Part shown: in pieces, positions 46,889-50,614 of the stretch
Position numbering within the stretch: the first letter of the stretch is position 1
Layout: each line of letters opens with the position of its first letter
From: Blastocystis sp. Blastoise
Taxonomy: Eukaryota; Protista; Bigyra: Opalinata
NCBI GenBank assembly: GCA_039096225.1
Contig: JBBPEB010000034.1
Span: 124,001-188,000, forward strand
Reading direction: 5' to 3'
DNA length: 64,000 nt
Notes under the pieces: model-generated
The model's input: only the letters and a program-made list of their open reading frames with translations
What the model was told of the DNA's origin: nothing
Databases searched by the model: none
Translations under genes and position numbers: made by a program

Positions 46889-47555
46889 TTATAATTCATT
46901 TCCAACAGTAACCCAGTTATTTCTCAAATTATTTCGACGCCCAAAAATCTCCATAAAATAACCTATATATAATATAATAATAATAAGTTTAATAAATAAT
47001 AATAATAATACTATATATATATATATAGTATTATAATAATATATATATATACCATTTGGAATAACTTGTTCAATAATTTTATAGAGTTCCATTGGTTTTT
47101 GACTCTGTCCTGTTCTCTCTGCCCATATAATGTCACTTAATAAATTCAATTTTGCAGCAGGAACTGAACCCTGTAGAATAAGATATATGTATAATCATAA
47201 ATAAAATAGTAAATATTATAATAAATTCTTCATAATTTTTATACAAATTTTTATACTAAATTTTTATTTATAAATAGAATAAAAAATAGAATAATAAAAT
47301 GTATTATATATAAATATTTATATATACTCTTTTTGCAATAAGACATGTTTCTTTACTATGTTGAAGATAATAACCGTGGGACTTGGCTAGTCTTCTACTT
47401 TTTGTACATTTCACCCAACTAATCTCATCAATATATCTATATATAAAAAGATATTTAATAAATAGTATATTCAAGATATTTAATAATATATACATTATAA
47501 TAACAGCAAATATAAAATATATTAAACATTAATGCTAATGATAAATATAATATAG

Positions 47556-47594
<39 letters not shown>

Positions 47595-47753
47595 TATTCA
47601 AATCCCCATTTATTCATCATATCAAAGGCTTGTCGGTATTTGGCGTTAATTACCCATATAAATAGAAGACCATTGGGAACCAAAATATTCACGGGAATCT
47701 CTTGAATTAAAGAATCATCTAATTGTTGATAAGCAATAGCTACCTATAGTTAT

Positions 47754-47809
<56 letters not shown>

Positions 47810-49487
47810 CATAATAATAATATATCTATATACTCCTCTAGTAGGGTTAGCACAGGAGAGTTGCCACGGGGGATCCATCATTAAACAATCGAAATACTGA
47901 TTCGTATATTGATGCTGTACTTCGCAGAGATGCTAAAACATAGAATATATAGAGTCATAATTATATAGATAATAAGTATAATAATACTAATAAATATAAT
48001 AATACTAATAATAAACATCAAACTAATAATAAAAAAAAACTAACAAATACCAATATAATCAACATATATAAATATAATTATTATAAAATACTATATATAT
48101 ACTTTAAAGTTAAATGTACGTATATCTGCATTAATAGGAATACTATATTGAGGAGGTTTCTCGATACTAAATAAATGACTTGTCTCTCTCATATCTATAT
48201 ATATAGAATTATAAAACATATATATAGAATCATACATATATATAGATATATAAAATATATATATATAGAATCATACAACATATTTATATAATCATAAAAT
48301 ATCTATATAAAATTATAAAACATATATATATGAATATTTAAAAAAAAAATAATACTAAATGATAATAAAAAATACATGGTTCTAATTCTGTAGCTGTAGA
48401 AGTATCGACAATCTTCTTCTTATTAGTCATAGCTTCTGTTAATATATTTATATTAATAGCTTTATCTAATAATTGATTATCTTTTAAAATCTTTCGCATC
48501 GAAGAGAAGACAGGATAAGGAGTCAAACCGATCTCCATACGATGATCATCATCATCTCGTTGCTATATAAAAATACATATAAACATGAATCTATTATGTT
48601 TTATTTTAAAAAAACGAACATTAGGCAATTAACATAAAAAACAATAATATTTATGTATATACTGGAGACACAACACCACGTTGTTCTTCATCATGAATTG
48701 AAGGAGAATTGTCTTCAAAAAGCAACTCCTGTTCTAATTTAAATATCTGATTCTGAATCTTCTTTGCTTGAAACTCTTTTGAAGATAATCCTTCATATTC
48801 ATATTCATCATTATCTATAAAAAATGATTTCAAAAACATGAACAACTTAGTTTAAGTCGAAAATACAAAAATATATATATTTAAAAAGCGAGGGAAATAA
48901 GACATAAATAGGGAGAAGACAAAAAAAAATAAAACTGGTTGATTGTCAAATATATATATAGATACCTTTATCATAATCAGAATGTCTGTTATATCGTCTG
49001 GGTGAATGGGAAGAACGAGCGGACTCGGGAGTAAAATCTTCTTCATCAGAATTATCACCGTCGTCATCAAAACCTATATAAATATATCAGTCATATATAA
49101 TTTGAAAATTTAATTAGAATGCATAGAATTACCTAAGAGATCTTCATTAATAAATTGACAATTGTCACAAATATATGTATCCATGAGTGCTGCTTGCTCT
49201 TCTGTAATTCCAACACTATATTGAATAATAAACATATAATTTGAAACGAATCTCTCTTACCATTCACAGTGATACCATGTGTCACAGTAATCACAACAGA
49301 TCATAGTTCCAGAGGGTGGACCCTTACAATAACAATACTGGCTCATCTTTCCACTGTCAAAATTCTATGTATACTAACCTCCTTGTATCAAAGAACTTGC
49401 AACTACTTTAATTTATTTTTCCACACAAAAAATTATAAATTCACACAATAACTACGATTATTTACTCATCTACCTACATATATCCAT
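46889..49487 (-). CDS. AMT1: MT-A70 family DNA N6-adenine methyltransferase of the AMT1/MTA1 clade with an N-terminal PHD finger (multi-exon; alternative start 49346)
   Basis: Spliced catalytic domain: SIPINADIRTFNF, FDCLMMDPPWQLSCANPTRGVAIAYQQLDD, FIWVINAKY, IDEISWVK, LAKSHGYYLQHSKETCLI, SDIIWAERTGQSQKP, EIFGRRNNLRNNWVTVGNEL*. N-terminal PHD: YCYCKGPPSGTMICCDYCDTWYHCECVGITEEQAALMDTYICDNC. Confidence 0.9.
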
Positions 49488-49965
49488 TATAATCGTGATT
49501 CTTAATTGTGACGCGGCTTTCAACCCACTTAAAAAAAGGCGGTCGTTTCTATATAACTAAAAACTATTTTTTATCATTCTCTGTAAATCAAATAAATTTA
49601 ATGTTTTTTAATGTAGAAAATGTAAGCGTATCACATTTACTCTTCTATTTCTTTCTTTCTATACGTTCTGAGATCTTTTGAGATTCTTTAAACAAGTTGT
49701 AGGAATACTTAAAAATTGATTTTCTTGTCTAAACTTGCTATTTATTCCAAATTTCCTATATAAACCATTCAAACATCATACTCTTTAAATTATAAAACCT
49801 TCACAATTCCAGAAACATTCAGTCATTTTCAATTCTTATTCTCATTTTTTATGAGTTTCTAGAATTCTCGTTTTCTTTTGGGTACAAATGAGAAAAAACC
49901 GCGATTCTCGCTAAACTGAACGTTTTTCTTTTCTTTTATAGTAAATTTCTTTTTAATATACTCAA

Positions 49966-50322
49966 ATGGCTAAGCATCATCCCGATTTAATTATGTGTCG
50001 TAGACTTCCTGGTCTCGGTATATTTCTTTATTTATATATCTCTATCTCATTTCTATAGCAATTGGACGTTTATGTGAAAAATGTATGTAATATTCTTGCT
50101 TTTATTTATCGAATCCTATATAGGCGATGGAAAATGCGTGATTTGCGATACATATGTCAAGCCTTGTACGTTAGTTAGAATTTGTGACGAATGTAATTAT
50201 GGTAGTCGAGATGGACGTTGTGTTATTTGTGGAGGTCCTGGTATCTCTGATGCTTACTACTGCAAAGAATGTACAATTATGGAACGTGATGTAAGTGTTG
50301 ATTTTTTTTTATATTTAGTTCT

Positions 50323-50366
<44 letters not shown>

Positions 50367-50614
50367 TTACGTGAAATTACTTTATTCAATTCATTAATTA
50401 TATGTATATATAGCGTGATGGTATGTGTAATAACCTATTATATTAAAACCACATTTCTTCATTTTGGTGATATATATATATTGTTTATATTTAAAATCTA
50501 TTCATATTCATTATATTTTTTCAATATATAGGTTGCCCAAAAATTGTTAATATAGGGTCTGCTAAAACAGATATGTTCTATGAACGAAAAAAATATGGAT
50601 TTAATAAACATTAA
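49966..50614 (+). CDS. PHF5A: SF3b splicing factor PHF5A/Rds3 (5 exons)
   Basis: [34 protein letters not shown]...[20 protein letters not shown]...[26 protein letters not shown]. Confidence 0.97.

What the first reader, a model, noticed from the sequence alone, without database searches (positions are those of the whole stretch)
46889..49487. PHD-finger and AMT1/MTA1 fusion: a one-chain H3K4me3 reader and DNA 6mA writer
Seen: phase-consistent splicing links an N-terminal C4HC3 PHD finger (YCYC...MICCDYCDTWYHCECVG...YICDNC) through an acidic/helical linker to an MT-A70 domain with an intact DPPW (47864-47875). Known: DPPWQL-x4-P-x-RGVAIAY, INAKY, HG-x-YLQH-x-KE, QSQKP and RRNNL-x-x-NWV-x-x-GNEL are hallmarks of ciliate AMT1/MTA1 DNA ApT 6mA methyltransferases, not of RNA METTL3. 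AMT1-type 6mA marks linker DNA downstream of TSSs, next to H3K4me3 nucleosomes. The Tyr/Met/Trp positions match the aromatic cage of Spp1/CFP1/ING-type H3K4me3 readers. Inference: this organism has genomic symmetric 6mA, and the enzyme is recruited directly by H3K4me3. As far as I recall, the characterised ciliate enzymes lack a fused PHD.
Basis: partly seen in the sequence, partly recalled or inferred. Interest (0 to 1): 0.92.

Follow-up and report, generated by a model that had tools for sequence, protein, structure and literature searches.

The report
Histone-reader-fused DNA adenine methyltransferase
A gut protist (Blastocystis) carries its DNA adenine methyltransferase fused to a domain that normally reads the 'active gene' histone mark H3K4me3, which gives a direct way to test whether that mark steers DNA adenine methylation.

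Summary
Confirmed, with one flaw. An 11-exon minus-strand gene (49346-46889, 417 aa) joins an N-terminal PHD finger to an MT-A70 domain of the AMT1/MTA1 family: 18 of 21 DNA-binding and catalytic residues of Tetrahymena MTA1 are identical, and METTL3 scores far worse. The fusion is genus-wide in Blastocystis (ST1, ST4, ST7). Intronless assemblies of two orthologues, one polyadenylated, carry both domains in one ORF. The PHD keeps the Tyr/Met/Trp cage and the H3R2-binding Asp. The genome also has three p1 genes (noted earlier in this scan, confirmed here), an MLL-type SET domain and canonical H3. Three environmental PHD-AMT1 fusions do not group with Blastocystis (AU p=0.0003). I found no paper describing the fusion, although Pfam annotations show it and a PHD on p1 is published for ichthyosporeans. 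Genomic 6mA and H3K4me3 binding are inferred, not shown. The cage is lost in ST7, and H3K4me3 is dispensable for bulk 6mA elsewhere, so the PHD more likely focuses the enzyme than licenses it.

The parts
49261..49346 (-). Exon 1: ATG and first half of the PHD finger; cage Tyr4 (49337-49335), Met15 (49304-49302), Trp24 (49277-49275) and H3R2-site Asp19 (49292-49290)
   Evidence: Pfam PHD E 3.4e-4; best PDB hits DIDO1, PPS, Spp1; cage table
49133..49215 (-). Exon 2: second half of the PHD finger (last Cys at 49160-49158)
   Evidence: 56% identical to the P0290 ORF; intron 1 is at the same codon and phase in ST4
48966..49073 (-). Exon 3: acidic, low-complexity linker
   Evidence: Frame; weak match to P0290
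48663..48814 (-). Exon 4: predicted helix (about 48764-48711) conserved across Blastocystis; probably the MTA1 N-terminal helix that packs on p1 and p2 (inference)
   Evidence: 48-53% identity to orthologues; MTA1 N-terminal helix described in PMC12485025
48376..48562 (-). Exon 5: Blastocystis-specific helical linker
   Evidence: 45% to P0290, E 8e-14
48103..48194 (-). Exon 6: start of the methyltransferase domain
47834..47932 (-). Exon 7: catalytic DPPW (47875-47864) and gate loop 1 with the R221 equivalent
   Evidence: Only MTA1 chains hit in PDB at E up to 10
47598..47743 (-). Exon 8: MT-A70 core (V223, I225, Y227, I254 equivalents)
   Evidence: MTA1 E 1e-10 versus METTL3 0.08
47437..47597 (-). 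Intron 8, 161 nt, AT...AG ends beside an (ATT)n run; unresolved: non-canonical donor, assembly error or variant
   Evidence: the sister ORF P0290 supports this junction
47328..47436 (-). Exon 9: substrate-binding loop with the duplex-wedging His (H291 equivalent, 47378-47376)
   Evidence: MTA1 E 6e-10 versus METTL3 0.007 (searched as 47331-47435)
47053..47170 (-). Exon 10: gate loop 2 (R328, Q331, S332, K334 equivalents)
   Evidence: MTA1 E 2.5e-7 versus METTL3 0.76
46889..46962 (-). Exon 11: C-terminal conserved motif and TAA stop
   Evidence: 96% to P0290, 74% to ST4; profile match
49474..49487 (-). Optional 14-nt first exon (would add 7 aa through an acceptor at 49353); unproven
   Evidence: In frame only with that acceptor

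Best explanation
This is the only AMT1/MTA1 gene detected in a tortoise-clade Blastocystis: the catalytic subunit of the ApT DNA N6-adenine methyltransferase complex, with a PHD finger on a flexible N-terminal tether. Shown by sequence: one ORF, AMT1 family, intact catalytic and DNA-contact residues, intact PHD cage, three p1 genes, an H3K4 methyltransferase and a canonical H3 tail. Inferred mechanism: AMT1 works with p1 (and probably AMT6/7 and p2) to flip out and methylate adenine at ApT in linker DNA, preferring hemimethylated sites. The PHD holds K4me3 in its Tyr/Met/Trp cage and H3R2 on its Asp, anchoring the complex to nucleosomes just downstream of transcription starts. This concentrates the enzyme on those linkers and limits off-target methylation, rather than being an on/off switch. 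Step odds: one chain 0.97; DNA 6mA writer 0.92; PHD prefers H3K4me2/3 0.75; that binding shapes 6mA placement 0.6.
For: Single frame and per-exon collinearity with intronless orthologues. The ST4 contig L010 is polyadenylated and equals the genomic gene minus 8 GT-AG introns with 0 mismatches. Nine of 10 window introns have a same-phase counterpart at or within 1-2 alignment columns in ST4 or ST7-like genes. Each catalytic exon hits MTA1 far above METTL3; the ST4 orthologue gives E 1e-71 versus 4e-34; the fold of its domain matches MTA1 first. 18 of 21 MTA1 residues named in PMC12485025 are identical and 2 are conservative. PHD nearest PDB relatives are H3K4me3 readers: DIDO1, Spp1, CFP1, BPTF, PHF2. 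p1 E 1e-21, three copies; MLL-type SET E 8e-28; canonical H3 tail. The PHD exons stay 48-64% identical to ST4 against 40-42% genome-wide (PMC10690189).
Against: No 6mA or H3K4me3 data for Blastocystis were found. The cage is lost in ST7 and in P0061 and partial in three others; ST1 and ST4 have Asn at the Asp site. H3K4me3 loss does not lower bulk 6mA in three other AMT1 species. AMT6/7 and p2 were not found, though the search was too insensitive to exclude them. Intron 8 lacks a GT donor.
Confidence: 0.6

Rival explanations
1. The enzyme is a working AMT1 6mA writer, but the PHD is accessory. It binds the H3 tail without methyl preference, binds another protein, or is redundant with other cues (H2A.Z, hemimethylated ApT, PCNA), so 6mA placement does not depend on it.
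For: Cage lost in ST7 while the zinc ligands are kept. Most AMT1 proteins have no PHD, yet 6mA still sits beside H3K4me3 (PMC12695648). H3K4me3 is not required for bulk 6mA elsewhere.
Against: Here all four reader residues are intact with ING/DIDO-like spacing, and the Trp is kept in 7 of 9 fusion proteins.
Confidence: 0.27
2. The gene is broken in this strain: the AT at the intron 8 donor is a real mutation, the intron is retained and the product stops before the substrate-binding loop.
For: No in-frame GT donor; the orthologous intron is GT-AG in ST1 and ST4; no read-level check was possible.
Against: Exons 9-11 show no decay (61-96% to P0290). It is the only AMT1 found in a genome with three p1 genes. 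Other readers of this scan report frequent non-canonical donors in this genome, including AT-AG (untested by me). One base change gives the gene's commonest donor.
Confidence: 0.06
3. The enzyme methylates RNA (a METTL3-like role, as the database label 'mRNA m(6)A methyltransferase' says) and the PHD links it to active chromatin co-transcriptionally.
For: Database labels; Blastocystis ST7 has no METTL3 or METTL14.
Against: AMT1-specific duplex-DNA residues are conserved; every exon tested prefers MTA1; DNA-clamping p1 partners are present; there are no CCCH fingers.
Confidence: 0.04
4. The PHD exons and the methyltransferase exons are two adjacent genes joined by the gene model.
For: No reads from this strain could be laid.
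Against: No stop after the PHD once spliced; largest gap 181 nt; two orthologous intronless ORFs hold both domains; shared intron positions.
Confidence: 0.02

Closest known systems
Ciliate AMT1/MTA1 (Tetrahymena; PDB 7F4R, 7YI8, 8XYL; PMC7145601, PMC12485025)
   Same: MT-A70 domain with DPPW, gate loops and substrate-binding loop; 18 of 21 named residues identical; p1 partner present
   Different: N-terminal PHD finger, where the ciliate N-terminal region is largely disordered apart from one helix; three p1 paralogues; AMT6/7 and p2 not yet found here
PHD-containing p1 subunit of ichthyosporeans (PMC12695648)
   Same: A PHD finger built into the AMT1 complex, proposed to read H3K4me3
   Different: There it is on the p1 accessory subunit; here it is on the catalytic chain, and no PHD was seen within 1.5 kb after the start of the three p1 genes
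Blastocystis ST7 CBK23014, ST4 KAK8794419/KNB45468, ST1 OAO18233
   Same: Orthologues with the same architecture and intron positions; Pfam PHD + MT-A70 precomputed for ST7 and ST4; CBK23014 is a taxon in the published MT-A70 tree
   Different: Labelled hypothetical or 'mRNA m(6)A methyltransferase'; the PHD is not discussed in any paper I found; the ST1 model reads the PHD in the wrong frame; ST7 has lost the cage
H3K4me3-reading PHD fingers (DIDO1, Spp1/CFP1, BPTF, PHF2/8)
   Same: C4HC3 ligands, Tyr/Met/Trp cage, Asp at the H3R2 site
   Different: Fourth cage position is Pro; host protein is a DNA methyltransferase; binding untested
Other eukaryotic N6A methyltransferases fused to histone readers (fungal clade 4; chlorophyte Dam with PWWP/ZfCW; PMC4738411)
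   Same: Reader-writer fusion logic for adenine methylation
   Different: Different methyltransferase clades, not MT-A70/AMT1

Membership tests
AMT1/MTA1 | MT-A70 domain with intact DPPW | tested here: met
AMT1/MTA1 | Closer to MTA1 than to METTL3, METTL14, METTL4 or MTA9 | tested here: met
   Exon-wise PDB searches; orthologue and profile; nests among AMT1-like proteins in a tree without outgroup
AMT1/MTA1 | Base-flipping and DNA-contact residues of MTA1 (R221, K280, K286, K289, H291, F293, Q296, R328, Q331, S332, K334 and others) | tested here: met
   18 of 21 identical; K286R and F293Y conservative; N284S changed
AMT1/MTA1 | p1 partner encoded in the genome | tested here: met
   Three genes on contigs C13, C18, C19; PDB p1 E 1.4e-21 for the C13 copy
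AMT1/MTA1 | AMT6/7 (MTA9) and p2 partners encoded | tested here: inconclusive
   Not found, but the AMT1 profile barely sees most whole MTA9 chains and no referenced query was available; ST7 has one AMT6/7
AMT1/MTA1 | Symmetric ApT 6mA in genomic DNA, in linkers downstream of transcription starts | not testable with these tools
   No modification data; no paper on Blastocystis 6mA
AMT2/5 | C-terminal ZZ zinc fingers | tested here: not met
   The protein ends at the methyltransferase C-terminal motif
METTL3 | N-terminal CCCH fingers and best similarity to METTL3 | tested here: not met
PHD finger | C4HC3 zinc ligands | tested here: met
H3K4me3-reading PHD | Aromatic/Met cage and acidic H3R2 site | tested here: met
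   Tyr4, Met15, Trp24, Asp19 align with DIDO1; criteria from PMC8246079 and PMC8166343
H3K4me3-reading PHD | Measured preference for K4me3 | not testable with these tools
   Needs a binding assay

The most novel reading that the evidence does not exclude
AMT1 has picked up a PHD finger on its catalytic chain several times independently (Blastocystis and up to three unnamed lineages; a fifth solution is the PHD on p1 in ichthyosporeans). In Blastocystis strains with an intact cage, 6mA placement is set directly by H3K4me3, a mirror image of the way unmethylated H3K4 licenses DNMT3 cytosine methylation. ST7 would then be a natural cage-less control.
Probability: 0.3. Interest if true: 0.8.

Novelty: new variant of a known kind. 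Interest (0 to 1): 0.62.

Why it matters
Whether H3K4me3 directs eukaryotic DNA 6mA or merely sits beside it is stated as open in the 2025 survey (PMC12695648) and in 2025-2026 work on Tetrahymena and Rhizopus. A reader and the writer in one chain reduce that question to a point mutation and a peptide-binding assay. It also predicts an unreported active-chromatin 6mA system in Blastocystis, the commonest eukaryote of the human gut, for which long-read data already exist (PMC10690189). Subtypes with intact and lost cages give a natural comparison.

Tried and rejected
They had gone out earlier within and, for base 47328, of the same turn. The spliced model was searched exon by exon; the joined-protein search was left out, and the joined model was used only in local scripts for frame, alignment and tree. 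Run X1 holds 0.39 of the words; all exons predict 0.33 plus UTRs and one half alone about 0.17-0.20. This fits expression of both halves but is weak, says nothing on linkage, and X1 is only guessed to be RNA. A U12-type origin for intron 8 was rejected as unlikely: no U12 donor consensus, and GT-AG in orthologues. A GA-AG donor gives no frame that keeps the conserved motif. No phage match. Single-sequence folding of the full ST4 protein failed (pLDDT 34). The Atlas search gave only MT-A70 clusters under 0.9. Among 80 metagenome loci (26 distinct cores) only Blastocystis had a PHD. Weak p1-like hits were CDC5L and Myb proteins, not p2. One ST4 intron offset was mistyped (true: phase 0); the text uses the corrected value.

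Full report
Observation. The feature is a minus-strand gene of 11 exons between 49346 and 46889. Joined in a local script they give one 1254-nt frame, 417 aa plus stop. Exons are 28-44% GC and introns 6-23% GC and 45-181 nt long. Exon 1 hits Pfam PHD; exons 8-10 hit MT-A70. DPPW is at 47875-47864. Nine introns are GT-AG.

Organism. The closest full-length relatives are Blastocystis proteins. The assembly (33.34 Mb, 34 contigs; about 24% GC in the window) fits the tortoise isolate Rus-B (33.3 Mb, 33 contigs, 23.1% GC; PMC10690189). This is an inference.

One chain or two genes. Orthologues answer the question instead. The ST4 contig L010 carries a poly(A) tail and equals the ST4 genomic gene minus eight GT-AG introns with no mismatch; it encodes PHD and MT-A70 in one ORF. 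A closer, unnamed relative (P0290, intronless contigs from two runs) aligns to all 11 exons in order, 60% overall, and has the same residues across the intron 8 junction. Five ST4 introns fall at the identical alignment column and phase, three more at the same phase within 1-2 columns in the loosely aligned linker, and an ST7-like gene shares intron 5. ST7 (CBK23014), ST1 and a second ST4 paralogue also carry the PHD. The fusion therefore predates the split of tortoise and human subtypes. The joined model was not sent to any search tool; searches were exon by exon.

Intron 8. The same intron is GT-AG in ST1 and ST4. A single G would give the donor used by five other introns of this gene, and the site abuts an (ATT)n run, so an assembly error or variant is plausible. 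Other readers in this scan report many non-canonical donors in this genome, AT-AG among them; I did not test that. Downstream exons show no decay, so a dead allele is unlikely (about 6%).

Family. Each catalytic exon searched matches Tetrahymena MTA1 far better than METTL3: E 2e-6 versus no hit, 1e-10 versus 0.08, 6e-10 versus 0.007, and 2.5e-7 versus 0.76. The ST4 orthologue gives 1e-71 versus 4e-34, and its modelled domain matches MTA1 structures first. Of 21 MTA1 residues that bind the flipped adenine or the duplex (PMC12485025), 18 are identical, including D209, R221, H291 and K280; two are conservative and one differs. There are no ZZ or CCCH fingers. It is the only AMT1-type gene detected. 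AMT6/7 and p2 were not found, but the searches could not have seen them reliably; ST7 is listed with two AMT1, one AMT6/7 and no METTL3/14/4.

PHD. All eight zinc ligands are present. The nearest solved relatives are H3K4me3 readers. Tyr4, Met15 and Trp24 align with the DIDO1 cage and Asp19 with the H3R2 site. The genome has a canonical H3 tail and an MLL/Set1-type SET domain. Across nine fusion proteins the cage is complete in four (this one, ST1, ST4a, P0292), partial in three and lost in two, including ST7 (the regular expression mis-set the ST4a first position, which is Phe).

Spread. Most AMT1 proteins lack a PHD. Three intronless environmental ORFs have one: P0197 (two samples), P0061 (two samples) and P0292 (one). 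In a tree of the methyltransferase domain the five Blastocystis-type fusions group together (90/92), the other three fall elsewhere, and one clade of all eight is rejected (p-AU 0.0003). This suggests repeated gain; an ancestral PHD with many losses is not excluded because the tree is unrooted, and assembly chimeras are not fully excluded.

Mechanism. Shown: architecture, family, intact active site, intact cage, partners. From established work: AMT1 complexes methylate ApT in linker DNA beside H3K4me3/H2A.Z nucleosomes (PMC7145601, PMC11761967). Inferred: the PHD on its acidic tether anchors the complex to those nucleosomes. In Tetrahymena and Rhizopus, loss of H3K4me3 leaves bulk 6mA but raises off-target 6mA, and in Acanthamoeba inhibitors change little. 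A focusing role is therefore more likely than a strict switch, though none of those species is reported to have the fused PHD.

Novelty. The families are known, a PHD on p1 is published for ichthyosporeans, and reader fusions are known for other adenine methyltransferase clades. Automated Pfam hits already show PHD + MT-A70 on ST4 and ST7 records. I found no paper describing a PHD-AMT1 fusion or 6mA in Blastocystis; the library lacks most subscription journals and figures are not held. Verdict: a real, new variant of a known system that makes an open question directly testable. Interest 0.62.

Noticed in passing
window 47597-47437 (-): Intron 8 has AT...AG ends where orthologues have GT-AG; other readers of this genome report many non-canonical donors.
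   Followed up: partly
L069, L070, L071 around 1300-1530 (G000 C13:488246, C18:380879, C19:871204): Three p1 paralogues for a single AMT1; possibly alternative complexes.
   Followed up: partly
window 49957-50440 (+): A PHF5A/Rds3-like gene (recognised by eye, not searched) starts about 610 nt from the AMT1 start codon, head to head; a shared promoter region is likely.
   Followed up: no
G000 C2:87347-89308, C8:2207159-2209072, C15:1043963-1045876, C17:860426-862387, C26:414603-416564: A multi-PHD, MLL3/4-like open frame occurs in five near-identical copies; on C26 an MLL-type SET domain lies about 6 kb downstream.
   Followed up: partly
L008:1501-3032: The public ST1 model OAO18233 reads the PHD in the wrong frame and misplaces the intron after the WGY motif, hiding the fusion.
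   Followed up: yes
L039:2001-3519 (P0291): ST4 has a second, fast-evolving PHD-AMT1 paralogue with changes in the substrate-binding loop (the H291 position is Asn); no counterpart was found in this genome.
   Followed up: partly
P0163 residues 1-60: An environmental AMT1 whose N-terminus looks Tudor-like by eye; Pfam finds nothing there.
   Followed up: partly
L003, L008, L009 downstream of the gene: In human subtypes a TALE homeobox gene lies tail to tail with PHD-AMT1; the downstream neighbour here (window 46288-43771) gave no homeobox hit, so local gene order seems not to be kept.
   Followed up: partly
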